Below are positions 3,007 to 25,828 of a DNA stretch of 64,000 nt, one piece after another. The stretch covers positions 62,001 through 126,000 of the IMG/VR virus record IMGVR_UViG_3300034104_005687; one strand, given 5' to 3'. Below the pieces are notes generated by a model, which worked only from the letters and a program-made list of their open reading frames with translations, searched no databases and had not been told where the DNA came from. The position numbers and the translations under genes are program-made. Each line of letters opens with the position of its first letter. Position 1 is the stretch's first letter.

Positions 3007-3927
3007 ATGTCAGAACCCTTGGTCAAAACACCAGCCAAAGTCAACTATCTCAACAACAGAGATATCCTCAAAGAAATTCATCTCAGCAAAAAAACCTATT
3101 GCAGCTACAGAGATCCTGTGACTGATCATCAGTACGATATCATACTGCCCAGTGTTGACAAGATCAATCAGCGCACAGTGGCCGAGGCCCGCAGAAATCG
3201 TGCCGACCGTATCAAACGCGAAACAGGGGAAATTGTAGACCCTACCAAAATTCCCAACACAGACATAGTGTTTAGAATTACCTGCTGGGAACACATTCCG
3301 CTGGCACCCAAGAAAGTGCCCAAAAATGCTACCAAGCGCAAGAAGCTAGAAGACATCCTGGACCTGGATGAAGTAGCAGTGGATCCTCTGGAGGATCTTG
3401 TGGAAGAGCCTGTGCTGGATCCCACACATGTGCGACTGAACTTTCCGCCGTTTTATCACTATCGCATCGACGAAAACAAGGTACCGTTTGTGGTGGGCAA
3501 GAGTCACTGGAAGGGCGATTTGGAAACGGGCGAGTATTGTCGCGATCACGGCAATATGACACGCAAGCTGGCCACCATGTTTATGAAACTGTGCGAGCGT
3601 TATGCCACAAGGAGCAACTGGCGTGGCTACACATACAATGAAGAAATGCGTGGACAAGCTCTACTACAGCTTAGTCAGATTGGTCTACAGTTCGACGAGA
3701 GCAAGAGCCAGAACCCGTTTGCGTATTACACTGCTGCGATCACTAACAGTTTTACGCGGATTCTCAACATAGAGAAAAAGAACCAAAACATTCGTGACGA
3801 TATCCTGGAAATCAATGGGTTGAACCCAAGCTGGACTCGTCAAAACTCAGGTGCCAAAAGCATGGCTGCCATGTCCGGACCGGTTGTGAGCAGCCTGGAT
3901 GATGTAGTACAATCAGTAGATGAGTAA
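3007..3927 (+). CDS. gp55: Late-transcription sigma factor, T4 gp55-like
   Basis: NYLNN N-terminal motif; NWRGYTYNEEM and FDESKSQNPFAYYTAAITNSFTRIL motifs; sits upstream of gp47/gp46 as in T4-like phages. Confidence 0.88.
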   Translation: MSEPLVKTPAKVNYLNNRDILKEIHLSKKTYCSYRDPVTDHQYDIILPSVDKINQRTVAEARRNRADRIKRETGEIVDPTKIPNTDIVFRITCWEHIPLAPKKVPKNATKRKKLEDILDLDEVAVDPLEDLVEEPVLDPTHVRLNFPPFYHYRIDENKVPFVVGKSHWKGDLETGEYCRDHGNMTRKLATMFMKLCERYATRSNWRGYTYNEEMRGQALLQLSQIGLQFDESKSQNPFAYYTAAITNSFTRILNIEKKNQNIRDDILEINGLNPSWTRQNSGAKSMAAMSGPVVSSLDDVVQSVDE

Positions 3928-4936
3928 TTTATTTAAAAAAGCCGCAATCTTTACCGACATCCATTTTGGGCTCAAGTCCAACAGTGTTCTACACAACGAA
4001 GACTGTTTGGCTTTTGTGAAGTGGGCCACGGCCAAGGCCCAAGAAGAAGGTTGCGAAACCTGCATGTTTCTGGGCGATTGGCACAACAATCGATCAAGCC
4101 TGAACATAGTCACCCTGAACTACAGTTTGCAGGCCTTGGAGCACATGAACAACAACTTTGAACGTGTGTATTTTATTCCAGGTAATCACGATTTGTACTA
4201 TCGGGATAAACGTGACATTCAAAGTGTAGAATGGGCCAAACACCTACCGCGTGTGGAAATCTGCAATGATTGGTTCAGCAGTGGCGGCGTCACTATTGCT
4301 CCTTGGCTATGCGGTGATGATCACAAACGACTGGCAAAAATGAGCGGTGAATATTTGTTTGGTCACTTTGAACTGCCAGGATACCTGATGAATGCAATGG
4401 TAGAGATGCCAGATCATGGTGAAATACGTCGAGAAGATCTTGGAGGGTTCGGACATGTTTTTACAGGACACTTTCACAAGCGGCAGACCAAAAAGAATAT
4501 TACCTACATCGGCAATGCGTTCCCTCACAATTATGCAGATGCTGGTGATGACGAACGAGGTCTCACTGTGTTGGAGTGGGGATCAGCGCCTGAATTTCAT
4601 GCTTGGCCTGCTCAACCAACGTACCGTGTGTACGGGCTGGCCAACCTTATTGACAACGCTGCGTCGCTGCTTCGACCCAAGATGCATGTCAGAGTTAACC
4701 TAGATATCGAGATCTCATACGAAGAAGCCAACTTTATCAAAGAAACTTTTGTGCGAGACTACAACCTGCGTGAGATGGCGTTGATTCCCAACAAGACTGC
4801 CGGTGTAGACGAAGATATGGCGCCCGGAGAAGTCAAGTTTGAATCAGTGGATCAGATTGTTACAGATCAACTTACCAACATTGAAAGTGAGTTTTACGAT
4901 AACAAGCTCTTGCTGAAGATTTATCAAACACTATGA
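3920..4936 (+). CDS. gp47: Recombination endonuclease subunit (Mre11/SbcD-like)
   Basis: Metallophosphoesterase motifs TDIHFG, LGDW, GNHD, GHFE, GHFH. Confidence 0.92.
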   Translation: MSNLFKKAAIFTDIHFGLKSNSVLHNEDCLAFVKWATAKAQEEGCETCMFLGDWHNNRSSLNIVTLNYSLQALEHMNNNFERVYFIPGNHDLYYRDKRDIQSVEWAKHLPRVEICNDWFSSGGVTIAPWLCGDDHKRLAKMSGEYLFGHFELPGYLMNAMVEMPDHGEIRREDLGGFGHVFTGHFHKRQTKKNITYIGNAFPHNYADAGDDERGLTVLEWGSAPEFHAWPAQPTYRVYGLANLIDNAASLLRPKMHVRVNLDIEISYEEANFIKETFVRDYNLREMALIPNKTAGVDEDMAPGEVKFESVDQIVTDQLTNIESEFYDNKLLLKIYQTL

Positions 4937-5649
4937 AATTGTATTTCAACGGATGCAGTCATACCTACGGTGATGATCTTGAAGATCCCAAAAGTAGTGC
5001 ATGGCCATCTGTTGTGTCTTCTGCACTAGGCGCAGATTTTTTGAATGACAGTGTCAGTGGTGGCACCAACGATCGCATAATGTATCGGACCATAAAGCAC
5101 CTAGATCAGTTTGATAAATTCTATATTGCTTGGACTTACACCACTCGATTTACCAGGTATAGAGCAGACAACAACCATGATGTCAACTTCAATCCTCAAT
5201 TGATACACAGGCTTTACAGCAAAGATCCTAACTTTGCAGAATATGGAAAAATACATTATCGGGTCTGGCACAACGAATTGTATGCTGCGAAGTTATGGTT
5301 GCAAAACATTGTGTTGTTGCAACGATTGTTTGAATCAGTCAACAAACCATATGTCATGATCAATACTGCGTCAAATCATCTAGATCGGTGGTTAAGCAGT
5401 TGGCAAGACTTTAATTCTAGTGTACAATCATTGTTGTGTTTTGATCTCATGAATGATCAGCAACTTGAACAAGAACATCTAGAACTACAAAAATTAGCAT
5501 CAATGATTGACACTTCCTGTTTTGTTGGATGGAATCAATGGTGTTTGGCCGACGAGTTAAAAAAATACCCGGTTGGACCAACTGGCCACTTACTGGAACA
5601 AGGACACAAGGCCACAGCCTTGCATATTTTAAAGCATGATTCACATTAA
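4933..5649 (+). CDS. SGNH/GDSL hydrolase-like protein
   Basis: N-terminal FNGCSHTYG, SGGTN, C-terminal TGHLLEQGH; resembles 59152 and 60603 products. Confidence 0.5.
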   Translation: MKLYFNGCSHTYGDDLEDPKSSAWPSVVSSALGADFLNDSVSGGTNDRIMYRTIKHLDQFDKFYIAWTYTTRFTRYRADNNHDVNFNPQLIHRLYSKDPNFAEYGKIHYRVWHNELYAAKLWLQNIVLLQRLFESVNKPYVMINTASNHLDRWLSSWQDFNSSVQSLLCFDLMNDQQLEQEHLELQKLASMIDTSCFVGWNQWCLADELKKYPVGPTGHLLEQGHKATALHILKHDSH

Positions 5650-7717
5650 AAAACTCACTGTCAAAAACTTCATGAGTGTGGGCAATGCCACACAAGGCAT
5701 TGACTTTGATCGCAGGGACTTGACGCTGGTACTAGGCGAGAACCTGGACCTAGGTGGCGACGGCAGTCGCAACGGCACAGGAAAGACCACAATCATCAAT
5801 GCGTTGAGTTACGCCTTGTATGGCAATGCACTGTCAAATATTCGCAAGGACAACCTTGTGAACAAGACCAACGGCAAGAACATGCTGGTAAGTCTGGACT
5901 TCAGTGTGGGCAGTCAGGACTACAGAATTGAACGTGGTCGCAAGCCCAATGTGCTGAAGTTCTATGTGAACCACGAAGCACAAGCTGCCACAGACGAAGC
6001 ACAAGGCGAAAACAAAGAAACGCAGGAAGTGATCGAACGCATCATGAGCATGAGTCACGACATGTTCAAACATGTGTTGGCGTTGAATACCTATACTGAA
6101 CCATTCCTGAGTTTGAAGGCCAATGAGCAACGTGCCATCATTGAGCAGTTGTTGGGCATTACCCTGTTGAGTGAACGAGCCGATCGTGTCAAAGAGTTAA
6201 ATCGACAAACCAAAGATGCGATCTCGCAAGAAGAATTTCGTATACGTGCCGAGCAAGAAGCCAACAAACGCATAGAAGAACAGATCGAAAGCCTGCGTCG
6301 CAGACAAGTGCTATGGCAGAAAAAATACGACAGCGATCTACAGATTCTAGTTGGTCAGTATGACGAACTTTCCAAGATCAACATTGAAGCAGAATTACAA
6401 GCACACCAAGACCTAACTGTATGGAGTGATCGTCGTCGACAACAAGAAGCTCGCAACAGCCTGTCAGCTCGCAGCACAGCCTGGCAACAAAAACACAACA
6501 CCGAAGTCGAAGCCGCAGGTCGTGCATATTCGGACAAGAATCGTATCAGCATTGATATTGAACTAGCAGCATGGGCACAGTTAGCTGCTCACAATCAAAA
6601 ATCTCGAGACATTGCCGAACTTGAAAAACTGATCGCCCGTTGTGTTCAGGACGAGAAGAAAGAAGTCAAGCTGGTAGAAAAACTACGAGCCGAGATTGAA
6701 GAACTCCGAAATCACAAGTGCTATGCATGTGGACAAGACTTTCATGATGTCAGTCACGAGTCAGTGTTGGCTACAAAAGAAAAAACACTACAAGAAGCTG
6801 CCTTACAGGTCTTGGCCACCAACAGTCAATGGATAGAGCACACTAATGCGTTGTTGAAGCTGGGCGAGCTGGGTGTTCCGCCCACAACACATTACACCAC
6901 AGAAGCCGAAGCAATACGTCACTCCACTGAGTTAGATGCGCTTCGTCAAACACTGGAAAATAAAACTACCGAAGTCAACCCTTATGCTGATCAACTGGCA
7001 GAAATGCCCGAAGTGGATCCTGGTCAGCAACCAGTTACCCACTACGACACCGAAGCAAAAGCTATCAAACACAGCAGCCAAGTTGCTAGTTTGCTGACAC
7101 AGATCACAAACAAGCATGCCGAAACTGATCCCTATGGTGAACAGATTGCTGATATGCAGACCAAGGCTCTGCAAACTGTGAGCTACGATCACCTCAACGA
7201 GCTGACCCGAGTACAGGATCATCAAGACTTCTTGCTGAAACTGTTGACTTCCAAAGACAGCTTTGTTCGCAAAAAAATCATTGATCAAAATCTCAGTTAT
7301 CTCAACAGCAGACTTACCCACTATCTGGATCGTATGGGCTTGCCGCACACTGTGAAATTCATGAATGATTTGTCGGTAAATATCGAAGAACTAGGTCGTG
7401 AACTGGACTTTGACAATCTGTCAAGAGGCGAGCGTACCCGATTAATTCTCAGCATGAGCTGGGCATTCCGTGATGTATGGGAAAGCCTTTATCACCCCAT
7501 CAACTTGCTGTTCATTGACGAACTGATCGACAATGGTTTAGACACATCTGGCGTAGAAAACGCCTTGGGTCTACTGAAACGCATGAGCCGCGAACGCAAC
7601 AAGAGTGTTTGGCTTGTGAGTCACAGAGACGAGTTGGCCGGACGAGTTGAGAACATACTCAGAGTGGTCAAAGAAAATGGCTTTACCAGCTATAATACAG
7701 ACATAGAGCATGCATAA
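5636..7717 (+). CDS. gp46: Recombination ATPase subunit (Rad50/SbcC-like)
   Basis: KNFMSVG, Walker A NGTGKTT, coiled coils with CYAC zinc hook, signature LSRGE, Walker B LLFIDE, SH motif. Confidence 0.93.
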   Translation: MIHIKKLTVKNFMSVGNATQGIDFDRRDLTLVLGENLDLGGDGSRNGTGKTTIINALSYALYGNALSNIRKDNLVNKTNGKNMLVSLDFSVGSQDYRIERGRKPNVLKFYVNHEAQAATDEAQGENKETQEVIERIMSMSHDMFKHVLALNTYTEPFLSLKANEQRAIIEQLLGITLLSERADRVKELNRQTKDAISQEEFRIRAEQEANKRIEEQIESLRRRQVLWQKKYDSDLQILVGQYDELSKINIEAELQAHQDLTVWSDRRRQQEARNSLSARSTAWQQKHNTEVEAAGRAYSDKNRISIDIELAAWAQLAAHNQKSRDIAELEKLIARCVQDEKKEVKLVEKLRAEIEELRNHKCYACGQDFHDVSHESVLATKEKTLQEAALQVLATNSQWIEHTNALLKLGELGVPPTTHYTTEAEAIRHSTELDALRQTLENKTTEVNPYADQLAEMPEVDPGQQPVTHYDTEAKAIKHSSQVASLLTQITNKHAETDPYGEQIADMQTKALQTVSYDHLNELTRVQDHQDFLLKLLTSKDSFVRKKIIDQNLSYLNSRLTHYLDRMGLPHTVKFMNDLSVNIEELGRELDFDNLSRGERTRLILSMSWAFRDVWESLYHPINLLFIDELIDNGLDTSGVENALGLLKRMSRERNKSVWLVSHRDELAGRVENILRVVKENGFTSYNTDIEHA

Positions 7718-7727: not shown

Positions 7728-8117
7728 GTGCTGTTGACCGTTGAGCATTCTAATTTGACTATGATACGTTTTGAAATCAATGGATCAGTGGTTGAGCACT
7801 ATCAACAACAACAAGAATATTGTGTTGATATAAACTGCAACGGCAATGTAGAAATATTCTTTGAACCATGGAAAATCAAACCATTGGTCAGAGTTGACAA
7901 TCATCTGTTGGATTACTGGTGCGCTGATATGCAATTGTACGATCACATGGTTAGACTTAAATGGGATTCAGGGTTCTATCATCGGTACCAAGAAAAAATT
8001 GTGCAGGGAAAAATAGATTACTTGAATCTAACAACACAAGAAGATATTGATTATTATTTGGGCATAAAAAATTCAAATCTAGATTTAGTTAGCCAACTCA
8101 AACAGTATTTAAAATGA
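7728..8117 (+). CDS. Hypothetical protein
   Basis: 129 aa; GTG start with AAGGA upstream; overlaps next gene (ATGA). Confidence 0.6.
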   Translation: MLLTVEHSNLTMIRFEINGSVVEHYQQQQEYCVDINCNGNVEIFFEPWKIKPLVRVDNHLLDYWCADMQLYDHMVRLKWDSGFYHRYQEKIVQGKIDYLNLTTQEDIDYYLGIKNSNLDLVSQLKQYLK

Positions 8118-9619
8118 GCCGAGTATTATTAGTTAACCTCCCCATGTACGACACATTGGCACCTCCCGGAGCATTGGCAGTTTTGGCAGCAATCTGCGAA
8201 CAAAATCAAAAGGCTTACGAGTTTTTAGACTTTAATATTTTTTTGCACCGCACACTCAACGAAAAAGAACTTGCTGAACTCAGTGATTGGTTGGTAGGTA
8301 TCACCATTGACTACCATGGTATCTCTGAAGAACTCAGACAAAAGGTGTTTGATCTATGGTGCGAGCAAATCAACAAAATAGATCCTGACAGTTTTGAATT
8401 CATTGGTATCAGTATTTTTAGTATGTGGAGTCTCAGGATGGCACAATTAATTTTGCCATGGCTGAGAAAAAGAACTTTATCCAAAATTGTATTGGGCGGC
8501 AACGGATGCAACAGTAAATTTTTTGATACAAAAATTGGCTTTTCTAGCTGGGTTGTTGAAAACCAATTGGCTGATTTTGTAGTGATCGGCGACGGTGAGC
8601 CCACGTTTGATGCCATACTCAAAGGCGAAACTTGTGTGCCCGGAGTTAATCAAGTACCTCAGAAAAACGACTGGGACATTGATCAATTCCCGATCCCCAA
8701 CTACAAAAACTTTGATCTGTCTTTGTATAGTGCAAAAAAAGTGTATGTTACCGGAAGTCGTGGATGTGTAAGAAACTGTACGTTTTGCGACATTGGTGCG
8801 ACTTGGCCTAAATTTCGATTCAGAAAAGCTGATAAGTTGGTAGAAGAAATCAAACAACATTACTATGATCTTGGGGTCACAGAATTTGATTTTACAGACA
8901 GTTTGATCAATGGTAGCATCAGTAACTTCTATCAATTCAACTGTTTGCTAGCTGAGGAAAAAGTCAAAAATCCTGATCTCAAAAATGTCAGCTACATTGG
9001 ACAATTTATTTGCAGACCCCAGTCTCAAATGTCTGCCTCACACTACGAAGCCATGTACTATGCAGGATGCAAGCAGGTTACCATTGGTATTGAAAGCTTT
9101 AGTGAAAATGTTCGATACCACATGCGTAAAAAATTTACCAATCTTGATATTGATTATCACATCGACCAATGCAGTAGATGGAATATCAAAAATGTTTGGT
9201 TGATGATTTGCGGGTACCCTACTGAGACATTGCAAGATCATGTTGAAAACTTAAACAGTTTAGAAAAATACTCCCTGTATGCCAAACAAGGAATAATCGA
9301 ACTAATTCGATGGGGAACTACCATGCACCTTATCGACGACACACCAATAACCAGTGCTGAGATGCTCAAGGATTTGGATATTGTATTGGATGCTCAAGGC
9401 AGCCTGGGATTTACCAGCACTTACAATTGGGTAAGTTCCAAGAATCCGTCTCTAGACCTTGCAGAGCGCATACGTCGGCGAGTTGAAATTCACGAACATT
9501 GTGTCAAGAATGGGTATCCTCAGCCAAGGGTCCGCCAAGAACTCAGCAGTTTGCTGACGCTGGCAAAGCAACACCTTGTGGGCCCAAGAAAAAAAATATT
9601 CGAGATTGGCCAGCTATGA
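8114..9619 (+). CDS. B12-binding-domain radical SAM enzyme
   Basis: N-terminal cobalamin-binding-like domain (GISIFS, IVLGG, VVIGDGE), SRGCVRNCTFC (CxxxCxxC), IGIES, GYPTET. Confidence 0.85.
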   Translation: MSRVLLVNLPMYDTLAPPGALAVLAAICEQNQKAYEFLDFNIFLHRTLNEKELAELSDWLVGITIDYHGISEELRQKVFDLWCEQINKIDPDSFEFIGISIFSMWSLRMAQLILPWLRKRTLSKIVLGGNGCNSKFFDTKIGFSSWVVENQLADFVVIGDGEPTFDAILKGETCVPGVNQVPQKNDWDIDQFPIPNYKNFDLSLYSAKKVYVTGSRGCVRNCTFCDIGATWPKFRFRKADKLVEEIKQHYYDLGVTEFDFTDSLINGSISNFYQFNCLLAEEKVKNPDLKNVSYIGQFICRPQSQMSASHYEAMYYAGCKQVTIGIESFSENVRYHMRKKFTNLDIDYHIDQCSRWNIKNVWLMICGYPTETLQDHVENLNSLEKYSLYAKQGIIELIRWGTTMHLIDDTPITSAEMLKDLDIVLDAQGSLGFTSTYNWVSSKNPSLDLAERIRRRVEIHEHCVKNGYPQPRVRQELSSLLTLAKQHLVGPRKKIFEIGQL

Positions 9620-10218
9620 AAATATTCTTAACCGGTGCATCAAGCGGCATTGGTGCTGCTTTGTTTGAAACTTTGTCAGTGGACCATCAAGTAATTGCAC
9701 CCAACCGTAACACATTTGATCTAACCAATACAAAACATATCGATGACTTAGATGTCGACTTTGACATGTTGATAAATTGTGCTGGTACCGGACTAGGCGG
9801 AAAACAACAGTTTGCAAATCATTGCAGCAACGATGTTGTTGAAATTTTCAATACCAATTTGCTTGCGCCAATTTTACTAACCAAAAACGTATTAAAAATC
9901 AATCCAGCATGTAAAATAGTCAACATTACCAGTACCAACAACAATCGGTATTGGCCAGGAGATTTAGTATACAGCCTGACCAAATCTTCATTGTCTATAT
10001 TTGGAGACATGCTTCGTGTCGAGTATCCTGATTGTTGTTTGCTAGAGATTAGATTGGGATTAACTAAAACCAATTTCAACAAAGCAAGATACAAGAACAC
10101 ACCTGATCGATATCAGGACATTTACAACAATCCGCATTTGCTTCCAGAAAATGTAGCAAACAAAATTGTCAGTGTGTTGTTTGACAATACAGTAAAATAC
10201 ATAGAAATTTCTCCTTGA
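9616..10218 (+). CDS. Short-chain dehydrogenase/reductase
   Basis: Start ATG 9616 (ATGA overlap): TGASSGIG, INCAG, catalytic YSLTK. Confidence 0.88.
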   Translation: MKIFLTGASSGIGAALFETLSVDHQVIAPNRNTFDLTNTKHIDDLDVDFDMLINCAGTGLGGKQQFANHCSNDVVEIFNTNLLAPILLTKNVLKINPACKIVNITSTNNNRYWPGDLVYSLTKSSLSIFGDMLRVEYPDCCLLEIRLGLTKTNFNKARYKNTPDRYQDIYNNPHLLPENVANKIVSVLFDNTVKYIEISP

Positions 10219-11312
10219 TGTATCCTTGGCAACTTTATCATTGGCATTTTGAAGTCAGTGGCAAATGCACACTGAAGTGTCCTCGGTGTCCTCGAAATGA
10301 TGCCAGCCCTGTACCGTGGTTAAACAAAGAACTGGATTTGAATTTTTTCAAAAAAATTCTAACTCCTGATCTACTTAAAAACACAGTCCAACGTATCACA
10401 ATGTGTGGTGACATTGGAGATCCAATCTATGCCAGTGAATACATCGAGATCGTAGACTACATCAAATCACATAATCCCAAAATACATGTGTATACCATCA
10501 CCAATGGCAGCTATAGAAAAGCTGATTGGTGGCAAGATTTTGCCAAAGTCAGTAACGAGTATGACACTATTAATTTTAGTATCGACGGGTACGATAATGA
10601 GTCAAACAATCTATACAGAGTTGGCAGCAACTGGGACAGTATCATGCAAGGCATGGATATCATGTGCCAACATAGTTCTGCATTTGTGTACTGGGCCACT
10701 ATTTTGTTTAAGTTCAATCAGGCCCACATTGATAGCATACGAGCCCAAGCACAAAACGCCGGGTGCGATGGATTACAACTTACGTACAGTACAAAATTTG
10801 GCAGCAAGTACGGAGAAGCATACGGTGGAGTCCATGACCCGCTTGAACCTGATCTAGAGTTTATAAGCAAAACTCATCGATATGAAAGATACTTTGAACA
10901 GCTCTCTGACAGACAACAGCTGAACCAATCTTATCTAGCTCATAATCAGCAACGTTTTATAGAAATCAAACAGCAGCATCAACAAATGATAACTCCCATG
11001 TGCAGCATTGGAAATCGAGGAATATACGTCAGTGCCGACGGAATACTGCATCCATGTAGTTGGGTCAGCTATCCATACCACAGTATCAGCACAGATCGAA
11101 AAACTATACATTTTAAAGATAGTTTTCATCAGATACATAGAAGCAAGTTGGATTTGAAATCTAGGTCACTGGATCAGGTCCTGAATGACCCAGTTTGGTC
11201 CAAACTGTTTGATACATTCGACAATCAAGGCAAAGCCTGGGTTGAATGTGAACAAAAATGCCATTGTAATTTAGTTGATCAGAACTATGCTGTAGGTTAT
11301 CTTACCAATTGA
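10218..11312 (+). CDS. Radical SAM enzyme with C-terminal SPASM/Twitch-like domain
   Basis: CTLKCPRC, GDIGDP, TNG, FSIDG; C-terminal C...ADGILHPC...CEQKC. Confidence 0.85.
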   Translation: MYPWQLYHWHFEVSGKCTLKCPRCPRNDASPVPWLNKELDLNFFKKILTPDLLKNTVQRITMCGDIGDPIYASEYIEIVDYIKSHNPKIHVYTITNGSYRKADWWQDFAKVSNEYDTINFSIDGYDNESNNLYRVGSNWDSIMQGMDIMCQHSSAFVYWATILFKFNQAHIDSIRAQAQNAGCDGLQLTYSTKFGSKYGEAYGGVHDPLEPDLEFISKTHRYERYFEQLSDRQQLNQSYLAHNQQRFIEIKQQHQQMITPMCSIGNRGIYVSADGILHPCSWVSYPYHSISTDRKTIHFKDSFHQIHRSKLDLKSRSLDQVLNDPVWSKLFDTFDNQGKAWVECEQKCHCNLVDQNYAVGYLTN

Positions 11313-11314
11313 CT

Positions 11315-11953
11315 ATGAATACCTTGAAAGAAATAATTGAGATTGAAAATTTTTTAACTGCTATTGAGCTTGAACAAGTAAACGCAGCAGTTGAAAAATG
11401 GCAAATGGTTCCTTATTATTCCAACGGTGGAAGATTTACCAAAGGTAGTTTAATTGCCAATCAGGCCATACAGCCATGGGATCAATCTGATCAAGCTGTC
11501 AGCATCATAAAACCAAAATTAGACAATCTGCTCGGCGAATATCGTGTGTCTGAACTGGTGCTTCAAGAATTATCTTTGCCCTGGGATGTTCACACTGATT
11601 ATGTTAGATCCAGCAATGTTGGGCGCCCTTATTATTCGGTCATTATTGCATTGAGCAATTGCGACAGTCGTACGATACTGTTTGATCAAACTGCCGAACA
11701 CAACGATTTTTATAAGTTCAAACAGACCAATAAAAAAACAACAAATCCAGTGGATCAAAACTTTTGGCAAAACAACCTAAGCCATTGTTGGGATGAAGAC
11801 CGAGAGTATTTGAGTCTTCGATATGTAAGTCGTCCCTGGAAACCTGGTAACTTGTTTTCATTCCAACGAAATGTATTACACTCCAGTGACAATTTTCATA
11901 CCAGAACTTCGTACCCCAAAAGATTTATACAAATATTAACAGACAAAATTTAA
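11315..11953 (+). CDS. 2OG-Fe(II) oxygenase-like protein
   Basis: IEIENFLT start, HTD (HxD), distal LHSS and KRFI residues; ATG 11315 preferred over TTG 11309. Confidence 0.55.
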   Translation: MNTLKEIIEIENFLTAIELEQVNAAVEKWQMVPYYSNGGRFTKGSLIANQAIQPWDQSDQAVSIIKPKLDNLLGEYRVSELVLQELSLPWDVHTDYVRSSNVGRPYYSVIIALSNCDSRTILFDQTAEHNDFYKFKQTNKKTTNPVDQNFWQNNLSHCWDEDREYLSLRYVSRPWKPGNLFSFQRNVLHSSDNFHTRTSYPKRFIQILTDKI

Positions 11954-11986
11954 AAGCAACCTGGCAGCAATCATAAATTATATGCA

Positions 11987-12421
11987 ATGACATGGCTATA
12001 CAACAATCAACCGGTGGAAACTCTCCCAGAAGATTGTGTGGGCTTTGTGTACCTAATCACCAACATCAGAACCGATCGCAAATACATAGGCAAAAAACTA
12101 GCCAAGTTCTCAAAAACAACTCAACGAACAGTCAAACTCAAAAACGGCACCAAGAAGAAAAAAAAGATTCGCACCAAGGTGGACAGCGACTGGCAGGACT
12201 ATTACGGTAGCAGCCCAGAGCTCTCCCGGGATGTTGAATCTCAAGGCAAAGACAACTTCAAACGAGAAATACTTTATTACTGTAAATCTAAATCAGAATG
12301 CAGCTATATCGAAGCAAGAGAACAATTTTCACGACGAGTGCTAGAATCCCAAGACTGGTACAACGGACACATTCAGGTTCGTGTGCACGGCAGTCACATA
12401 ATCAACAAACTACACAGTTAA
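11987..12421 (+). CDS. Small GIY-YIG nuclease-family protein
   Basis: GFVYLITN...KYIGKK, YYGSS, conserved E (YIEARE) and N (WYN); Lys-rich insertion. Confidence 0.8.
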   Translation: MTWLYNNQPVETLPEDCVGFVYLITNIRTDRKYIGKKLAKFSKTTQRTVKLKNGTKKKKKIRTKVDSDWQDYYGSSPELSRDVESQGKDNFKREILYYCKSKSECSYIEAREQFSRRVLESQDWYNGHIQVRVHGSHIINKLHS

Positions 12422-12864
12422 GCAGTCAAGACTTGCACAGGTCAACCTCGTGTGCCGAACAGTAGAAACCTGGGCCCAGTGTCGCAGGGATCCGAAGCCT
12501 CGCCGCTGCCGCGAGCACTCAATCAGTATCCTTGACAGGACCACGATCGCTCAACACCTGCGATTTGATTGTTTGAACAGAATTTTAAAAGGGAAAAAGA
12601 CGTACTAGTGATAGTACACGTTTGTATGCATGTTAGCGTGTGTGATACAAATCGCCGTTGTGATAAAGACGCAGCTCGAGGTACCGGACAACCGCCTCTG
12701 CAATGCTGTAACGCTAAGTGACTTGCCCGACTCGGATGAAGTTTCTTTGCCCTGTGCGGGCAAAGTGTGACCATAAGATCTGGATGAAGCATTTAATCGC
12801 TTCGCTCTTTGATTCAACAACTGGTGTGAGCGACAGCGATACACCAAGAACTGCGTAGCAGTTC
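12422..12864 (+). ncRNA. Putative large structured non-coding RNA or origin-type element
   Basis: 443-nt gap with no credible ORF and about 10 hairpins, including GTACTA-GTGA-TAGTAC (GNRA loop on plus strand), CTTTGCCC/GGGCAAAG, GAACTGC/GCAGTTC, and a three-way junction closed by CAATCA/TGATTG. Confidence 0.6.
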
Positions 12865-13899
12865 TCAATAGTTGGCCACTGGATGTGTGTTGGGTTCTAG
12901 CAATTTGTGCAAGTCTTGTGTGTTGTTTGGAAACTTTGACAATTTCCAAGTTTTGAGATTTAGATTGTGTTGATATATCAAACAGTGCTGTATCACTACT
13001 TCTTGATCAAATGTTAGATCAATCTCGTAATACCAGTTGTTGACAATGCTGTCAACTATGTGCTGATAATTGTAACAGAAACTCAGCAAATTCAATTGTT
13101 TGGTTTGCCACTTTGCGTATATGGGTCTCCATGCTGCTAATCTTTCTGATACCATCTCTAAACTCAAATAGTTCAACATCTTTTGAACCGCTTGCTCGCC
13201 GCGGTACCACAACTCCTGGCAGTTGATCCACAAGTGAGGATATGTCATATTTTTTAAATATAACTCTTGATAGTAAAAAGGTCTTGAATCTAGTGCCTGT
13301 TGTTCTCGTTGGTCCCATATATCTGTTAGTCCTAAGTCTGTCCACGAGTCGATGCTGTCTTTAAAAAATAATTCTTGACGGTGCTGTTTTAATTCTCTGA
13401 CACTGTTGTATGGTTGATGATCAATTGTTTCTCCTTCTAATGCTCGCGGTTCTAAATGGTACAGTTGAATATTTGGATGATTTCCAATGTATATTAACTT
13501 TGCATTGCGAAGATTGCAAAATTCAAACACTTGATCAAAGTCTTGACTTATGTATTGAAAAATTTGTGATCTAACAGAAGGTATACCAATATCAGATATT
13601 GGTATATTTTTTTCATCTACTGCAACAACAAGTTTCAATGGGTATGGGTATGCGGAATACAGTTGGTGTTGCGGCATGGACAACAAGGACTCTATAAATT
13701 TTTGTGTGTTAACAAAGCCCATGGGATGATTTTTTTTATACCCATGGGCATTGAGTTCTTGCACAGGATCATTGGGCAATTCCAACCACTGTTGTTGATG
13801 TATATTGTAGTGATGTGTCTGCCCGGACAAGAAATGAATAGACCAATCAAAAAAAGTGCACCCTACTGGGTATGCACTAGTAATGCAATACACACTCAT
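12865..13899 (-). CDS. Hypothetical protein, possibly sulfotransferase-like fold
   Basis: 344 aa; N-terminal strand plus GCTFFDW resembles the sulfotransferase PAPS loop; weak. Confidence 0.5.
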   Translation of the reverse strand: MSVYCITSAYPVGCTFFDWSIHFLSGQTHHYNIHQQQWLELPNDPVQELNAHGYKKNHPMGFVNTQKFIESLLSMPQHQLYSAYPYPLKLVVAVDEKNIPISDIGIPSVRSQIFQYISQDFDQVFEFCNLRNAKLIYIGNHPNIQLYHLEPRALEGETIDHQPYNSVRELKQHRQELFFKDSIDSWTDLGLTDIWDQREQQALDSRPFYYQELYLKNMTYPHLWINCQELWYRGEQAVQKMLNYLSLEMVSERLAAWRPIYAKWQTKQLNLLSFCYNYQHIVDSIVNNWYYEIDLTFDQEVVIQHCLIYQHNLNLKTWKLSKFPNNTQDLHKLLEPNTHPVANY

Positions 13900-14231
13900 A
13901 AATTTTGATCAGGCCAGTCCCTAAACAAAGCATGCTGGATGTCACCTGCTACAAACTGATTGAAGCTACGGTGTTTGGTTTCCAGTTCGCCTTCCAATGG
14001 TGCTACCCTCTTGAAAGCACTGTCCATTTGAGCCATGTCTGTAAACTCCATAAGTATCATCCATTCAGGCATGTCTGCTATGCTACGAAAACCCATCTTG
14101 CAGCGTGTGATACGATAGTTTTCCAGTTTGCCCTCAGACTTCAGATGATCAAAAAAGCTCTTCATTCCGTTGACCCATTCAAGGTCTGAAATGTCTCCGG
14201 CCTTGTTGGCCCATATTGTGTAGATGTCCAT
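13896..14231 (-). CDS. DUF6614-like small alpha/beta barrel protein
   Basis: MDIYTIW...HLKSEG...RITRCKMG...EF.DMAQMDSAF...ALFRDWPD pattern. Confidence 0.6.
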   Translation of the reverse strand: MDIYTIWANKAGDISDLEWVNGMKSFFDHLKSEGKLENYRITRCKMGFRSIADMPEWMILMEFTDMAQMDSAFKRVAPLEGELETKHRSFNQFVAGDIQHALFRDWPDQNL

Positions 14232-16269: not shown

Positions 16270-19200
16270 ATGGATCAAGAATTAAGAGACCTAGTTGAAC
16301 AGATGCGTCAACTGATTCCGGTGCTGCAAGGAATGAGCAAACCTCCTGGCGCAACTGTGGACAGCCCTGCTGACAAAATGACTCGAGGTGTAGATCGAAT
16401 GGTTGTGGCCCTGGGTCAACTAGCAGTCAAATTGGATACTACCAAAAAGACACGTCGTGACGAAGAAGAAGCTGTCAAAAAGTTTGCCAAAGCAGTGGAA
16501 AAAACTGCAGATAACATAGAAGAAGAAAACAAAGAACGCCAAAAAGTCACTGATGCTTTGGAAAAAGAAAGCAAGGCTCGAGAAGAAGCAATTAAGGAAG
16601 CAACTCGTAGAAACAATCTGTCGCAGCAAGGACGTGAGCAAGAAGACAAAGAAAGAGCCAAGTACGAAGCAGAACAACGCAATCGTAATACCAAACTAAG
16701 CATAGAACAAAACCGTAGGTCCTCTAGCAGCAGCAAAGATTTGTTTGATTCATTGAGCAGCACAGGGGGCAGTGCTGAGATATTGAAAAACAAGTTCTTG
16801 AATCTTGGAGGAGACAGTTTAACAGCACAGTCAGGTCTACAATTGTTCAGTGCTGGTCTCAGCGGCACCACAAAATCTTTGACCACATTTGCATCAGGCT
16901 TGATCAATGGTGAACGTGGTGCGCAACTGTCTGCCAAAGCACTCAACGATTTTGCCACACCAATATTGAACGTAGCAAGTAGTATAGGTACTTTGCTGAC
17001 GGTGTTGTCTTTTATTCCTGGTCCTGTTGGAATATTGACTCGTGGTGCCAGAATGGCAGGTGCAGCAGTGTTTGGGCTAGGATCAGCTGCTGGCAAAGCT
17101 GCACTTAAATTCAACGAGATAGGAGCCAAGCAGCTTGACACCCTGGTAAAAAGTTTCAACGACGCCAGCGGCGCAGGTGTTAGTTTAACTGGTGGACTAG
17201 AAGGCACTCTGGACCTAATGCACACGCTGAACATGACCACAGCGGATGCAGCGCAGTTTCAAGAAATGTTGAGTAAAAACAACAAGCAACTGGCCTTGTT
17301 GGGCGGAACAGCAGGTGTTGGAGCCAAGAGATTTGCTGAAGTTTCGGGTGCATTGGTCAAAAGCGATATTGGCCAAACGTTTGAAATCATGGGTATCACT
17401 CAACAAGAACAGCGAGAAGCTGCTTTGTTGTACATGAGCATTCAGGCCAGAACTGGCCAGCTGCAGTTAAAGAACACTGAAAAACTCATTGAAGAATCTG
17501 CTAGATTTGTACACGAATTAGATCAAGCAGCACAACTCACTGGCGCTACCCGACGTGAACAACAAGAAGCACGCGAAGCTGCAATGGCCGAAGTTAGATT
17601 CCGTGCAGCCTTGATAGATGCGCAGCAACGTGGCGATACCGCAGACATGGCTCAATTGAAAGTTGCTGAACGAGCAGCAGCTATTGCCAAAAGCCTAGGC
17701 GACGAAAAAGGCTTTCTTGGTATTTTGCAACAGGCAGCAGGCCAAGGAGCACTGACCACCCCAGAAGCAATAGCAGCAGAGCAAACCTACAGAATATCAG
17801 AAATACTGGCTCAGCCCAACATCACTGATCAGCAGATCCTGGAACACCTGGCCAAAAATGCTGATCTTAATTTGCAGTCATTGGCAGGTACCAACCGATT
17901 GATCGGCGGCATTGACGCATTGCAAACAGGTATTGTTGGCATGGACAATTCTGTCAAGCGTCAAAACGCACTAGCACAAGAAGCCGCCAAGGCAGGGTTC
18001 ACAGGTCCAGAAGCAATTACTAACTACCTTAAACAGGAAGAAAAGAAACGCAAACAGCCCGGCGGCGATCTTACTCTAATGGTCAGCGCAGGTCGTGCAC
18101 AGCAAGCTGCTGCACAAATCATGGAACAAGGTATTGCGACCTTTAATTCTGCAGCAGATATCAACAAAGCAGCATCCGAGGCTTTTGCAAACGCAGTTGC
18201 TATCTTTGGCTCAGCAGTGGGTGCAAACCCTGTGCCTGGCGGAACACCCACGTTTGGTGGCGTACCAGTGGAATCAGGTGTGCGTCTTCCGCCTACGCCG
18301 GAGGCTGCACAAGCCAAGGTGGATCAGGCCGATGCAAAAATTAAAGAGGTCGGGGACAAGATAAAAGAACAAGAGAAAAAGCTAGCAGAGGCCAAGACAA
18401 ATGTTGAAAAAGATAAAGCTGAAGCTGAAATTAAAAGATTGAAAAAAGAGAAGGATGATGCAGACAAGGCAAAAAATGCTGCTGATCTAGGAAAAAAAGC
18501 TGAAGAAAATAGACGTCGTCTTGAAGATGCACATAAACGTTCAAAATCAGGTGCTGCTCCAGGTAGTGCACCAGCAACCACCACACCGCCTGCTGCTCCA
18601 GGTAGTGCACCAGCAACCACCACACCGCCTGCTGCTCCGGGTAGTGCACCAGCCGCAAAGTCTGCTCCGGGTAGTGCACCAGCCGCAAAGCCTGCTGCTC
18701 CGGGTAGTGCACCAGCTGCAAAGCCTGCTGCTCCGTCTAGTGCACCAGCTGCAAAGCCTGCTGCTCCGTCTAGTGCACCAGCTGCAAAGCCTGCTGCTCC
18801 GGGTTCTACCCCAAATAATCCTGCACCTTTGCCACCAATGCCACCTGGTGCAAACCCAGCAACAGCCGAAAAGCCTACTGCATCTATTATTAAAATATTG
18901 GACCTAATAGGTCGTGCAGAAAGTCGCGGCAACTACAACGTATTGGTTGGGGGAGAAATAAACCCCGACTTAACCAATATGACTATTGCAGAAGTTCAGG
19001 ATTTTCAAGGTAAAATGGTTCGTGCAGGACATGAGAGCACAGCAGTTGGAAAGTATCAAATAATACAAGAAACACTCCGTACCTTGTTAACTCGAGGTGT
19101 AGTAAACCCAAACGAAACATTTTCTCCAAGCACACAAGACAAACTGGCCATTGCATTGCTTAATGAAAAAGGTTGGCCAAAATTTCAAAGTGGCAAGATG

Positions 19201-19680: not shown

Positions 19681-19696
19681 CGGTAAATAAGTCACC

Positions 19697-21493: not shown

Positions 21494-21501
21494 ATAACGT
21501 C

Positions 21502-21720
21502 ATGCTGCTACAAGAATTCTGGAAAAAAGCACCCGAAGCTTATCAAGACGTAAGTCAAGACAATGCACAAGTTACCAAAAACGACTTGCGCAAAACTCGC
21601 TTGACTTTGCGACAGCTCAACAAGCTACGAAAGATGAATGATGTGCGATCTTTTGAATACAAAGAGAAGCTCAAGAAAATTCGTCAACAGTACGCACCAC
21701 CACCACAACCTATTGCGTAA
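21502..21720 (+). CDS. Small head-module protein
   Basis: 72 aa basic protein between portal and core genes; TAAATA upstream. Confidence 0.7.
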   Translation: MLLQEFWKKAPEAYQDVSQDNAQVTKNDLRKTRLTLRQLNKLRKMNDVRSFEYKEKLKKIRQQYAPPPQPIA

Positions 21721-21824
21721 TTTTGATCATAATTGGCAATTTATGGCCTTTTTAGCCGATTAAACCGCGTATTTTTCTCTCGCATTGTAAATAACAATAC
21801 ACTTTACTTACAGGAGTTTTCTCT

Positions 21825-22685: not shown

Positions 22686-22689
22686 TTAA

Positions 22690-23328: not shown

Positions 23329-23340
23329 GGAGAATCAGGA

Positions 23341-24432: not shown

Positions 24433-24454
24433 TCTTTTTATATAGGAGACTTAA

Positions 24455-25651: not shown

Positions 25652-25677
25652 TCACTGCAAGGCTTTTCACAAGCAAC

Positions 25678-25705
25678 CAAAAAAGCACTTTCGGGTGCTT
25701 TTTTG
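25678..25705 (+). terminator. Rho-independent terminator after gp23 (possibly bidirectional)
   Basis: CAAAAAAGCACT-TTCG-GGTGCTTTTTTG. Confidence 0.85.
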
Positions 25706-25713
25706 TTGGCCGT

Positions 25714-25760
25714 AAAAAATCCGCACATTCTGACAAGTCAATTCAGGAGTGGCGCGGATT
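25714..25760 (-). terminator. Probable terminator for the TPR-glycosyltransferase gene
   Basis: AATCCGC...GCGGATT imperfect long stem followed by T run on minus strand. Confidence 0.5.
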
Positions 25761-25828
25761 AAGTAATATAGTTTAACGACTTTGCTTTTTATAGTATCTT
25801 GTATTGGATACAGGTGTATTGTACTATA

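What the first reader, a model, noticed from the sequence alone, without database searches (positions are those of the whole stretch)
7728..11953. Phage-encoded tailoring-enzyme cassette: B12 radical SAM, SDR, radical SAM/SPASM, 2OG-Fe oxygenase-like
Seen: five tightly coupled genes (ATGA/TGATG overlaps or 2-nt gap) directly after gp46. Known: these families methylate, reduce, cross-link and hydroxylate substrates in biosynthetic clusters. Inference: an uncharacterised pathway making a modified sugar, base or protein modification; the 129-aa first ORF could be a carrier or accessory. No precursor peptide was evident, so the substrate is unknown.
Basis: partly seen in the sequence, partly recalled or inferred. 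Interest (0 to 1): 0.65.

Follow-up and report, generated by a model that had tools for sequence, protein, structure and literature searches.

The report
Modular radical-SAM cassette in lake jumbo phage
Five tightly packed enzyme genes behind the recombination gene gp46 of a 349-kb lake-water phage are real and intact, but they are two independently shuffled enzyme pairs plus an optional oxygenase-like gene rather than one fixed pathway, and what they modify is still unknown.

Summary
Five co-directional genes (7728-11953) follow gp46 with ATGA, ATGA and TGATG overlaps and one 2-nt gap. All are conserved, and their catalytic motifs are intact.

The "one five-step pathway" reading is only partly supported. 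Across 49 non-redundant related phage loci the block splits into modules:
- **Core pair:** a short SDR plus a twitch/SPASM-type radical SAM enzyme. They are adjacent in 37 of 38 loci that carry the SDR. The radical SAM protein is more conserved than gp46 (median 73% vs 58% identity).
- **Mobile pair:** a new 129-aa Ig-like protein (O1) plus a class-B ("B12-type") radical SAM enzyme. They are adjacent in 11 of 11 loci, also at other genome positions. They are predicted to form a complex (ipSAE 0.82, best control 0.00).
- **O5:** an HxD/E...H oxygenase-like protein seen only together with the mobile pair. Its position varies.

The site is a variable hot-spot that ends in a SegE homing endonuclease and a Polynucleobacter-1 RNA.

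The genome has 15 radical-SAM domain matches plus sugar-tailoring genes. No ThyA-type hydroxymethylase, DpdA or precursor peptide was found.

My best guess is small-molecule (sugar or nucleotide-type) tailoring. This rests on analogy and is unproven.

The parts
5636..7717 (+). gp46-like Rad50/SbcC recombination nuclease subunit. It is the conserved left anchor of the variable site.
   Evidence: SMC_N, AAA_23 and Rad50 zinc hook. Present upstream of the cassette in nearly all related loci.
7728..8117 (+). O1: a 129-aa protein of a new small family. Residues 1-79 form an Ig-like beta-sandwich and residues 83-128 form three helices. It is the predicted small subunit or adaptor of the following radical SAM enzyme.
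   Evidence: - No Pfam, NCBIfam or PHROG match.
- Only 60 clusters among 1.84 billion representatives, 49-159 aa (mostly about 130-145), profile matches covering most of each protein, no fusions apparent.
- AF2 model pLDDT 95. Best PDB Z is 5.5 to filamin Ig domains, which is a generic match.
- Directly upstream of a B12-type radical SAM gene in 11 of 11 loci and in other contexts.
- Complex prediction ipSAE 0.82 against 0.00 for the best control.
8114..9619 (+). Class-B-like ('B12-type') radical SAM enzyme of 501 aa. It has an N-terminal Rossmann-like domain, a radical SAM core and a conserved Arg-rich C-terminal helix.
   Evidence: - Radical_SAM 53.9 bits; B12-binding only 13.1 bits against a cut-off of 32.1.
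- Best NCBIfam matches are B12 radical SAM families, all far below their cut-offs.
- C218, C222 and C225 are invariant in 28 sequences.
- 925 homologues, several on contigs of about 300-350 kb (the window's phage is 349 kb), none with an informative name.
9616..10218 (+). Short classical SDR oxidoreductase of 200 aa. It is the partner of the SPASM-type enzyme.
   Evidence: - adh_short 57.8 bits.
- TGASSGIG motif present.
- N81, S106, Y119 and K123 conserved in at least 95% of 38 sequences.
- Directly upstream of the SPASM gene in 37 of 38 SDR-bearing loci.
10218..11312 (+). Radical SAM enzyme of 364 aa with a twitch/partial-SPASM C-terminal domain holding one predicted auxiliary 4Fe-4S site. 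It is the core gene of the site.
   Evidence: - Radical_SAM 39.9 bits; SPASM 15.4 bits, below cut-off.
- Invariant C17/C21/C24 and C262...G275-x4-C280, C344-x3-C348.
- Model pLDDT 83.
- Z 13-16 to SuiB, SkfB, BlsE, PqqE, DesII, MoaA, anSME, viperin and BtrN.
- 1445 homologues.
- Median identity 72.7% against 57.7% for gp46 in the same 43 loci.
11315..11953 (+). O5: a 212-aa protein with an HxD/E...H motif. It is probably a cupin or 2OG-Fe(II)-oxygenase-like enzyme and is tied to the O1+B12 module.
   Evidence: - H93, D/E95, H189 and K202 conserved in 20 sequences.
- PhyH matched weakly in 9 of 20 members, best E 0.0013, all below cut-off.
- The protein atlas places it next to viral clusters, some carrying DUF6445.
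- It follows B12 directly in L004, L005, L012, L084, L086 and L087.
11987..12421 (+). SegE-like GIY-YIG homing endonuclease. It is the right-hand border of the variable site.
   Evidence: SegE_GIY-YIG 116.8 bits. Follows the cassette in most related loci.
12430..12574 (+). Polynucleobacter-1 RNA motif (RF01718), directly after SegE at the end of the plus-strand gene block.
   Evidence: 79.1 bits against a gathering score of 37. The same motif lies directly after SegE in L040, L076, L083 and L086, and about 1 kb downstream of it (after an inserted 341-aa gene) in L062, at 101-116 bits.

Best explanation
**Shown**
The block is a real, co-directional, translationally coupled gene set. It sits in a hyper-variable insertion site of a T4-like lake-water jumbo phage, between gp46 and a SegE homing endonuclease. 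It is a composite of three parts.
1. **Lineage-core pair.** A short SDR and a radical SAM enzyme with one twitch-like auxiliary cluster are almost always adjacent. They are under stronger constraint than gp46.
2. **Mobile pair.** The Ig-like protein O1 and a class-B-like radical SAM enzyme are always adjacent. They also occur at other genome positions and without module 1.
3. **O5.** An HxD/E...H oxygenase-like protein is found only where module 2 is present, at varying positions.

**Supported by a model only**
O1 docks through its C-terminal helices and its conserved R55, Y87 and G112 onto the conserved Arg-rich C-terminal domain of the B12-type enzyme. This fits a dedicated small subunit or substrate adaptor better than a substrate.

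**Inferred**
- Module 1 does radical-initiated oxidation or dehydration that yields a carbonyl, which the SDR then reduces with NAD(P)H. The net result would be deoxygenation or epimerisation.
- Module 2 does a cobalamin-type radical alkylation (probably C-methylation), optionally followed by O5-dependent hydroxylation.
- The modules are self-sufficient tailoring steps. Where both are present they may act on the same scaffold.
- The most likely substrate is a small, conserved sugar or nucleotide-type metabolite, not a peptide.
For: **Anatomy and coupling**
- Gene boundaries and overlaps.
- Module statistics.
- Alternative gene order with the same five families.
- O1+B12 in non-gp46 contexts.
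- A paralogous 'small ORF + B12 radical SAM' pair after UvsX in the same genome.
- Conservation of SPASM above gp46 in 43 of 43 loci.
- Intact motifs.
- Complex model: 0.82 against 0.00. At least 93% of contacts agree between runs and partner pLDDT is at least 88. The mark was reached by 58 of 80 solved complexes and 2 of 110 mismatched pairs. Three of the four near-invariant O1 residues lie in the interface.

**Substrate class (all indirect)**
- No N-terminal RRE domain. The cluster motif starts at residue 17, and there is a single auxiliary cluster site.
- No conserved small ORF inside the cassette.
- The partner is an SDR.
- Structural neighbours include the sugar or nucleotide enzymes BlsE, DesII, MoaA, BtrN and viperin.
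- The same genome carries a DegT aminotransferase, an NAD-epimerase/dehydratase, a carbamoyltransferase and a GT2.
- The only isolated-phage relatives of the radical SAM core sit in clusters of several radical SAM genes with amidinotransferase, NDP-sugar transferases, a DegT-type aminotransferase and a carbamoyltransferase.
- There is precedent for a radical SAM dehydratase with a reductase partner, AprD4/AprD3 (PMC5461906).
Against: - No substrate, product or activity has been observed.
- The top structural neighbours of the SPASM enzyme are peptide modifiers (SuiB, SkfB, PqqE). Their Z scores are tied with those of the sugar enzymes.
- The best HMM matches of the B12-type enzyme include RiPP and protein C-methyltransferases.
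- An Ig-like adaptor could point to a macromolecular substrate.
- Cobalamin binding is unverified. B12-binding scores 13 bits against a cut-off of 32. AprD4 and ArsL lie in the same sequence space without binding cobalamin (PMC12931638).
- The sugar genes of the genome are not adjacent to this cassette.
- The O5 fold was not modelled.
- The loci were sampled by similarity to two query proteins, so the co-occurrence frequencies are biased.
Confidence: 0.5

Rival explanations
1. **Protein or peptide modification.** The radical SAM enzymes post-translationally modify a phage or host protein, for example by C-methylation, cross-linking or epimerisation. O1 would act as the substrate-recognition adaptor, analogous to an RRE.
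For: - The highest Z scores of the SPASM model are to the RiPP maturases SuiB and SkfB, and to PqqE.
- B12-type matches include rSAM_ocin_1, ApyD and the MCR glutamine C-methyltransferase.
- O1 has an Ig-like protein-interaction fold.
- The genome carries a large expansion of radical SAM paralogues. Such expansions are typical of multi-site polymer tailoring; this is my own knowledge.
Against: - No conserved precursor-like ORF lies in or next to the cassette. The only recurrent small ORF (c20) is a basic, helical 57-62-aa protein that is absent from the window.
- There is no RRE domain.
- Only one auxiliary cluster site is present.
- An SDR partner is unusual for peptide maturases.
- 73% identity across phages whose gp46 is 58% identical argues against a co-evolving phage protein substrate.
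Confidence: 0.2
2. **Nucleic-acid modification.** The modules tailor phage DNA (or an RNA) after replication, as an anti-restriction measure. Combinatorial module exchange would resemble that of thymidine-hypermodification clusters.
For: - The cassette lies in the replication and recombination gene block after gp46/gp47 and, for the paralogous module, after UvsX.
- Modules are shuffled at a site flanked by homing endonucleases.
- There is precedent for a radical SAM enzyme acting on DNA, M6 gp53 (PMC8989533).
Against: - No ThyA-like dUMP/dCMP hydroxymethylase is present; only ThyX.
- No TGT/DpdA and no clear QueC.
- M6 gp53 is SPL-like, not SPASM-like.
- The adjacent genes are not kinases or aGPT-Pplase-type transferases, as far as the Pfam scans show.
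Confidence: 0.15
3. **One obligate five-enzyme pathway.** This is the first reader's reading: all five proteins act in sequence on one substrate and are selected as a unit.
For: - Tight translational coupling.
- The same five families co-occur in a second lineage in another order.
- O1-B12-SDR-SPASM is also present in L003.
Against: - SDR+SPASM stands alone in at least 30 loci.
- O1-B12-O5 stands alone between gp46 and SegE in L004, L005 and L012.
- O1-B12 stands alone at another genome site in L006, L007, L008 and L013.
Confidence: 0.1

Closest known systems
Class B (cobalamin-dependent) radical SAM methyltransferases, such as the PoyC/rSAM_ocin_1, PhpK, GenK and ladderane-type B12 radical SAM families
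   Same: A Rossmann-like N-terminal domain followed by a CX3CX2C radical SAM core. The best HMM matches are to these families, with E values from 1e-21 to 1e-13. A paralogue in the same genome has a clearer B12-binding domain.
   Different: - All scores are far below the family cut-offs, so it belongs to no curated subfamily.
- The B12-binding domain is sub-threshold.
- It has an obligate Ig-like partner protein (O1). I know of no described class B enzyme with such a partner (my own knowledge; a term search of the 2026 review PMC12931638 for 'partner' and 'accessory protein' found none).
- The family looks phage-associated: several homologues lie on contigs of about 300-350 kb, the size of this phage, and none carries an informative name.
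Twitch/SPASM radical SAM enzymes acting on sugars or nucleotides (BtrN, BlsE, DesII, MoaA), and the AprD4/AprD3 dehydratase-reductase pair
   Same: - Radical SAM core plus the C-terminal CX12GX4C auxiliary-cluster motif.
- Z 13.5-15.2 over most of the model.
- An adjacent NAD(P)H-type reductase, as with AprD4/AprD3.
   Different: - Identity is at most 18%.
- The distal Cys pair is C344-x3-C348, reached after a long insertion.
- AprD4 itself matches the other (B12-type) gene only weakly: 19 bits against a cut-off of 500.
- No aminoglycoside-type scaffold genes are adjacent.
RiPP SPASM maturases (SuiB, SkfB, PqqE, anSME-like)
   Same: Highest structural Z scores, 15-16. SkfB is the best PDB match by sequence, E 4.5e-4.
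   Different: There is no RRE domain, no precursor gene and no second auxiliary cluster motif (CX2CX5CX3C is absent). The partner is an SDR.
Clusters of several radical SAM genes in Campylobacter phage CP220, Pelagibacter phage Mosig and marine T4-like environmental genomes
   Same: - They are T4-like phages with several MoaA/SPASM-like radical SAM genes in accessory regions.
- The cores are 27-33% identical.
- Up to 12 radical SAM genes have been reported in one marine T4-like genome (PMC5332604).
   Different: The partner genes differ: amidinotransferase, glycosyltransferases, a DegT aminotransferase and a carbamoyltransferase. Those clusters have no O1, B12-type or O5 homologues in GenBank phages. 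None has been characterised functionally.

Membership tests
Radical SAM superfamily (both 8114-9619 and 10218-11312) | CX3CX2C cluster motif and a PF04055 score above the cut-off | tested here: met
   C218/C222/C225 and C17/C21/C24 are invariant. Scores are 53.9 and 39.9 bits against a cut-off of 29.5.
Class B cobalamin-dependent radical SAM enzymes | N-terminal cobalamin-binding Rossmann domain (PF02310) above threshold | tested here: inconclusive
   13.1 bits against a cut-off of 32.1. One homologue and two larger paralogues score better. The alignments to B12 radical SAM models start at about residue 90.
Class B cobalamin-dependent radical SAM enzymes | Actual cobalamin binding or use | not testable with these tools
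   AprD4 and ArsL lie in the same sequence space but do not bind cobalamin (PMC12931638).
Any curated B12 radical SAM equivalog (ladderane, PoyC-type, PhpK, QCMT, BzaD, HpnJ, BchE, AprD4, ArsL) | NCBIfam score at or above the curated cut-off | tested here: not met
   The best score is 74.4 bits against a cut-off of 360. All 25 matches are far below their cut-offs.
SPASM subfamily (two auxiliary clusters) | Seven-Cys motif CX9-15GX4C ... CX2CX5CX3C ... C | tested here: not met
   Only C262-x12-G-x4-C280 and C344-x3-C348 are conserved, with no CX2CX5CX3C. PF13186 scores 15.4 bits, below its cut-off of 21.5.
Twitch / partial-SPASM radical SAM enzymes (one auxiliary cluster) | CX9-15GX4C plus further Cys ligands, and a fold match to twitch/SPASM structures | tested here: met
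   Four invariant C-terminal Cys residues. Z 13-16 to SuiB, SkfB, BlsE, PqqE, MoaA and BtrN over residues 1 to about 350. Cluster binding itself was not tested.
Classical short-chain dehydrogenase/reductase | TGxxxGxG cofactor motif and the N-S-Y-K catalytic tetrad | tested here: met
   TGASSGIG is present. N81, S106, Y119 and K123 are conserved in at least 95% of 38 sequences. PF00106 scores 57.8 bits.
2OG-Fe(II) oxygenase / cupin (O5) | HxD/E...H facial triad plus a basic 2OG-binding residue | tested here: met
   H93, D/E95 and H189 are conserved, position 197 is always R or K, and K202 is invariant.
2OG-Fe(II) oxygenase / cupin (O5) | Significant profile match or a double-stranded beta-helix fold | tested here: inconclusive
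   PhyH scores 14.3 bits against a cut-off of 22, and 9 of 20 members match weakly. There is no PDB match by sequence. hhalign to two weakly 2OG-like (sub-threshold Pfam) proteins from related loci was not significant.
RiPP biosynthetic cluster | Adjacent precursor peptide gene and an RRE domain | tested here: not met
   No conserved small ORF lies inside the cassette. The small ORF c20 is absent from the window and looks like a basic helical protein. Neither radical SAM enzyme has an N-terminal extension.
Thymidine/cytidine hypermodification clusters | ThyA-like dNMP hydroxymethylase in the genome | tested here: not met
   PF00303 is absent from the 97%-complete genome; only ThyX is present. 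5-HMUDK and aGPT-Pplase were not searched specifically.
7-deazaguanine DNA modification | DpdA/TGT transglycosylase | tested here: not met
   PF01702 is absent and QueC scores only 14 bits. A QueD/PTPS-like gene exists elsewhere in the genome.
Viperin-like enzymes | NCBIfam viperin cut-off and no auxiliary cluster | tested here: not met
   25.8 bits against a cut-off of 180. Conserved auxiliary Cys residues are present.

The most novel reading that the evidence does not exclude
**Proposal**
- O1 plus the B12-type enzyme would define a previously undescribed two-component radical SAM system: an Ig-like adaptor subunit docked on the C-terminal domain.
- Several versions exist: O1, the c29-type proteins, and the 177-aa ORF after UvsX.
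- Together with the ultra-conserved SDR+twitch-radical-SAM pair and the other radical SAM genes of the genome (15 domain matches in all), it would build or install a new kind of modification. Candidates are a methylated or deoxygenated sugar-type moiety on phage DNA or virion, or an anti-defence metabolite.
- This would be specific to abundant freshwater jumbo phages that probably infect Polynucleobacter-like hosts.
Probability: 0.25. Interest if true: 0.8.

Novelty: new variant of a known kind. Interest (0 to 1): 0.58.

Why it matters
- Phage radical SAM genes are widespread in aquatic T4-like and jumbo phages, yet almost none has a known reaction.
- This work reduces a vague "tailoring cassette" to defined, testable units:
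  - a highly constrained SDR plus twitch-radical-SAM pair that marks a whole lake-phage lineage;
  - a portable B12-type enzyme with a predicted dedicated Ig-like subunit.
- Either unit could reveal new radical chemistry or a new virus-host interaction, such as a DNA or virion modification or an inhibitor.
- The work also places the orphan Polynucleobacter-1 RNA motif in phage genomes next to a homing endonuclease. That suggests a host for an abundant uncultured phage group.

Tried and rejected
**Searches that gave nothing useful**
- GenBank phages: no DNA match to the cassette and no protein match to the B12-type enzyme. Only 27-33% matches to the radical SAM core of the SPASM-type enzyme.
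- PHROGs: nothing for O1, B12 or O5.
- O5 profile against PDB sequences: only a chance ribosomal-protein match.
- hhalign among the accessory families O5, c21, c29, c73, O1 and c43-c48: no significant relation. The best was c29 against O1 at 7% probability.
- hhalign of O5 against two weakly 2OG-like (sub-threshold Pfam) proteins of related loci: not significant.
- Foldseek of O1 against PDB and BFVD: nothing at E ≤ 0.001. VIA wide search: only generic Ig domains, Z ≤ 5.5. The atlas gave one viral 184-aa cluster at TM 0.63. It may be the c29-type partner, but I could not check this.
- B12 profile against PDB: one unnamed radical SAM protein.
- Scan of 185,579 prokaryote genomes for the SPASM family: three hits. 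Two (L081, L083) show gp46/SegE phage synteny; the third (L082) carries only radical SAM paralogues plus the SDR+SPASM pair and may also be phage. All sit in MAG bins, so no clear cellular gene cluster is available to borrow a function from.
- Sequencing runs: 24 lake-water DNA runs and no RNA run, so expression is untested.
- Promoter and terminator scan: no more sites than in shuffled sequence.
- Repeat search: no flanking repeats that would mark a discrete mobile element.

**Readings considered and rejected**
- Cyanophage origin. The closest gp46 relatives are jumbo phages of Proteobacteria.
- Chance ORFs.
- Viperin, MoaA or AprD4 membership. All are below their cut-offs.

**Slips and limits**
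- Searches had wrong coordinates. One search was a mistaken too-short query. Searches were over the size limit. In one search the machine was busy.
- No alternative genetic code was used.
- Read laying was given 5,501 letters.

Full report
**1. What is there**

The window is bases 62,001-126,000 of a 349,369-bp virus record judged 97% complete. The same DNA occurs in at least 24 lake-water metagenome runs.

The genes after gp47 (3920-4936, Metallophos) and gp46 (5636-7717; SMC_N, AAA_23, Rad50 hook) are as follows:
- **O1**, 7728-8117. It starts at GTG with an AAGGA site 6 nt upstream.
- **B12-type radical SAM gene**, 8114-9619, with an ATGA overlap.
- **SDR**, 9616-10218, with an ATGA overlap.
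- **SPASM-type radical SAM gene**, 10218-11312, with a TGATG overlap.
- **O5**, 11315-11953, after a 2-nt gap.

A SegE-like GIY-YIG endonuclease follows at 11987-12421 (116.8 bits). After it the genes switch to the minus strand, up to a T4 baseplate-family gene.

- The five genes have 34-41% GC against 45.7% for the genome.
- Promoter-like and terminator-like sites are no more frequent than in shuffled sequence.
- Antisense ORFs of up to 152 aa lie wholly inside conserved sense genes; they were not searched separately.
- Contigs identical to the window bridge gp46-O1-B12, B12-SDR-SPASM and B12 through O5 in separate runs.

**2. The proteins**

*B12-type enzyme (501 aa)*
- Radical_SAM scores 53.9 bits, and C218/C222/C225 are invariant.
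- The best NCBIfam matches are B12-binding radical SAM families: ladderane-type lipid, RiPP C-methyltransferase, PhpK and the MCR glutamine methyltransferase. All are far below their cut-offs.
- The B12-binding domain itself scores only 13 bits.
- A 2026 review warns that AprD4 and ArsL sit in this sequence space without binding cobalamin (PMC12931638). "B12" is therefore an architectural label, not a shown property.

*SDR (200 aa)*
- It has TGASSGIG, and N81, S106, Y119 and K123 are conserved in at least 95% of 38 sequences.

*SPASM-type enzyme (364 aa)*
- It has C17-x3-C21-x2-C24 and the motif C262-x12-G-x4-C280. C344-x3-C348 is also conserved, but the CX2CX5CX3C block is absent. That means one twitch-like auxiliary site rather than a full SPASM domain.
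- Its model (pLDDT 83) aligns at Z 13-16 with SuiB, SkfB, BlsE, PqqE, DesII, MoaA, anSME, viperin and BtrN. The scores are effectively tied, so the fold does not give the substrate class.

*O5 (212 aa)*
- It conserves H93, D/E95, H189, a basic residue at 197 and K202.
- It gives only weak PhyH matches, in 9 of 20 members.

*O1 (129 aa)*
- It matches nothing in Pfam, NCBIfam or PHROGs.
- It has only 60 relatives among 1.84 billion representative proteins, of 49-159 aa (mostly about 130-145), with profile matches that cover most of each protein and no fusions apparent.
- It folds with pLDDT 95 into an Ig-like sandwich followed by three helices. It has no specific structural relative.

**3. Comparative anatomy**

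Searches with the two radical SAM proteins fetched 66 further viral loci. I mapped them by tblastn and ORF clustering.

In 49 non-redundant loci:
- SDR is directly followed by SPASM in 37 of the 38 loci that carry the SDR, nearly always right after gp46.
- In three loci a 170-175-aa SDR-like protein takes the SDR's place.
- O1 is directly followed by the B12-type gene in 11 of 11 loci. The pair lies before SDR-SPASM (window, L003, L064) or after it (L045, L046).
- The O1-B12 pair also occurs without SDR-SPASM (L004, L005, L012). In L006, L007, L008 and L013 it sits next to a helicase. That position corresponds to about 165 kb in this genome.
- More distant O1 homologues again overlap the start of a radical SAM gene of about 480-500 aa.
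- O5 occurs only where O1-B12 occurs. In L084, L086 and L087 the order is gp46-(second SPASM)-O1-B12-O5-shortSDR-SPASM-SegE.
- The five families therefore co-occur in two different orders. The window's order is unique to this phage.
- Other fillers of the site are a 179-189-aa ORF followed by a B12-type paralogue, extra SPASM paralogues, and a PDDEXK endonuclease.
- In the same 43 loci the SPASM protein is 72.7% identical (median) against 57.7% for gp46. It is higher in all 43.
- A scan of 185,579 prokaryote genomes found only three SPASM homologues, all in MAG bins. Two (L081, L083) show gp46/SegE phage synteny; the third (L082) carries only radical SAM paralogues plus the SDR+SPASM pair and may also be phage.

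**4. O1 as a subunit**

A complex model of O1 with the B12-type enzyme scored ipSAE 0.82, against 0.00 for the best of three controls.
- The runs shared at least 93% of their contacts, and partner pLDDT was at least 88.
- In the tool's calibration this mark was reached by 58 of 80 solved complexes and 2 of 110 mismatched pairs. The counts hold only roughly here because my own alignments were used.
- The interface uses O1 residues 55, 58-62, 84-91 and 108-128. These include three of the four near-invariant residues, R55, Y87 and G112.
- On the enzyme side it uses residues 351-357 and 391-397 and the conserved 450-488 region, including the ERIRRR-type helix.
- The conserved FEPWKIKP loop of O1 is not in the interface and points elsewhere.

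This supports binding but does not show it. It fits a small subunit or adaptor better than a substrate.

The genome also has a 177-aa ORF followed by a B12-type paralogue (35% identical) directly after UvsX. An atlas cluster of 184-aa viral proteins matches the O1 model at TM 0.63. The "small partner plus B12-type enzyme" arrangement may therefore be general in these phages.

**5. Genome context**

- The genome has 15 radical-SAM domain matches, 10 of them over the cut-off.
- These include a family of at least nine paralogues; five of the eight scanned with Pfam show an N-terminal SPASM domain.
- It also encodes a carbamoyltransferase, an NAD-epimerase/dehydratase, a DegT aminotransferase and a GT2.
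- It lacks a ThyA-like hydroxymethylase (only ThyX is present) and lacks TGT/DpdA.
- The only isolated phages with a related radical SAM core are Campylobacter phage CP220 and Pelagibacter phage Mosig. Both carry it in clusters of several radical SAM genes together with sugar-tailoring genes: amidinotransferase, NDP-sugar transferases, a DegT-type aminotransferase and a carbamoyltransferase.
- A marine T4-like genome with 12 radical SAM genes has been noted before, without a function (PMC5332604).

**6. Interpretation**

*Shown*
- The block is real and conserved, and its motifs are intact.
- It is a mosaic of SDR+SPASM (core), O1+B12 (mobile) and O5 (an add-on to O1+B12).
- It sits in a hot-spot bounded by gp46 and SegE.

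*Inferred*
- SDR+SPASM may be a redox couple in which a radical step yields a carbonyl that NAD(P)H then reduces. AprD4/AprD3 is the functional precedent, not a relative.
- O1+B12 may be a radical alkylase, with O5 as a hydroxylase.

*Substrate*
I favour a small sugar or nucleotide-type molecule, for five reasons:
- There is no precursor gene and no RRE domain.
- There is a single auxiliary cluster site.
- The partner is an SDR.
- Sequence constraint is extreme.
- The genome and distant relatives carry sugar-tailoring genes.

This is analogy. Protein and nucleic-acid substrates remain open.

**7. Novelty and verdict**

- The superfamilies are known. None of the five proteins belongs to a curated subfamily.
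- O1 is a new family. The O1 plus B12-type pairing and the lineage-core SDR+twitch pair are undescribed, as far as the searched literature shows.
- I rate the finding a new variant of a known kind (phage auxiliary tailoring genes), with interest 0.58.

Noticed in passing
window 12430-12574 (+); also L040 5270-5408, L076 8537-8673, L086 7696-7831, L083 11187-11331, L062 7045-7177: A full-length Polynucleobacter-1 RNA motif (RF01718; 79 bits here, 101-116 bits in relatives) lies directly after the SegE gene in this phage and in L040, L076, L083 and L086; in L062 it lies about 1 kb downstream, after an inserted gene. L083 was binned with a Polynucleobacter MAG and the phage comes from lake water. 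The orphan motif may therefore be a phage element, and the host may be Polynucleobacter-like.
   Followed up: partly
whole genome G000; in the window 58184-59152 (+): The 349-kb genome has 15 radical-SAM domain matches. One further radical SAM gene lies inside the window at 58184-59152. At least nine genes are paralogues of one family; five of the eight scanned with Pfam have a SPASM domain at the N-terminus rather than the C-terminus (G000 21620, 25448, 26656, 27912, 30329, 137609, 138742, 150267, 221592).
   Followed up: partly
G000 146924-151520 (outside the window): A second 'small ORF (177 aa) + B12-type radical SAM (505 aa, 35% identical) + 85-aa ORF + radical SAM (417 aa)' block sits directly after the UvsX/RecA gene. 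This mirrors the O1+B12 module that sits after gp46.
   Followed up: partly
G000 19002-31831 (outside the window): A cluster on the minus strand holds a carbamoyltransferase, an NAD-dependent epimerase/dehydratase and four radical SAM genes. It looks like a sugar-tailoring cluster.
   Followed up: partly
G000 312284-312844 (outside the window): A second DegT-type aminotransferase match is split in two and has two in-frame TGA codons. It may be a broken gene or a frameshift. An intact DegT gene is at G000 10287-11327.
   Followed up: no
L009 5814-5990, L045 9268-9453, L056 9387-9560, L057, L059, L065: A conserved 57-62-aa basic, helical ORF (motif ...ARKALGxLxKLxKxRRAEIQxKKN) recurs in the variable site of relatives, mostly just upstream of SegE (in L045 and L065 elsewhere in the site). 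It is absent from the window. It does not look like a RiPP precursor.
   Followed up: partly
window 4933-5649 (+): A 238-aa DUF6071 gene sits between gp47 and gp46. It overlaps both, and only some relatives have it. The gp47/gp46 junction is therefore a second small variable site.
   Followed up: no
window 13896-14231 (-): A 111-aa DUF6614 protein is 81-90% identical across relatives. It is the most conserved gene near the site, and its function is unknown.
   Followed up: no
window 7368-7551 and 11968-12151: In lake-water contigs the end of gp46 and the start of SegE attract several-fold more summed contig depth, with variant letters, than the cassette between them. Many co-occurring related phages seem to share the flanks but not this cassette sequence.
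   Followed up: no
window 34897-44130, 44466-48836, 49230-53198 (+): Three very long ORFs of 3077, 1456 and 1322 aa lie in a row. They were not examined.
   Followed up: no
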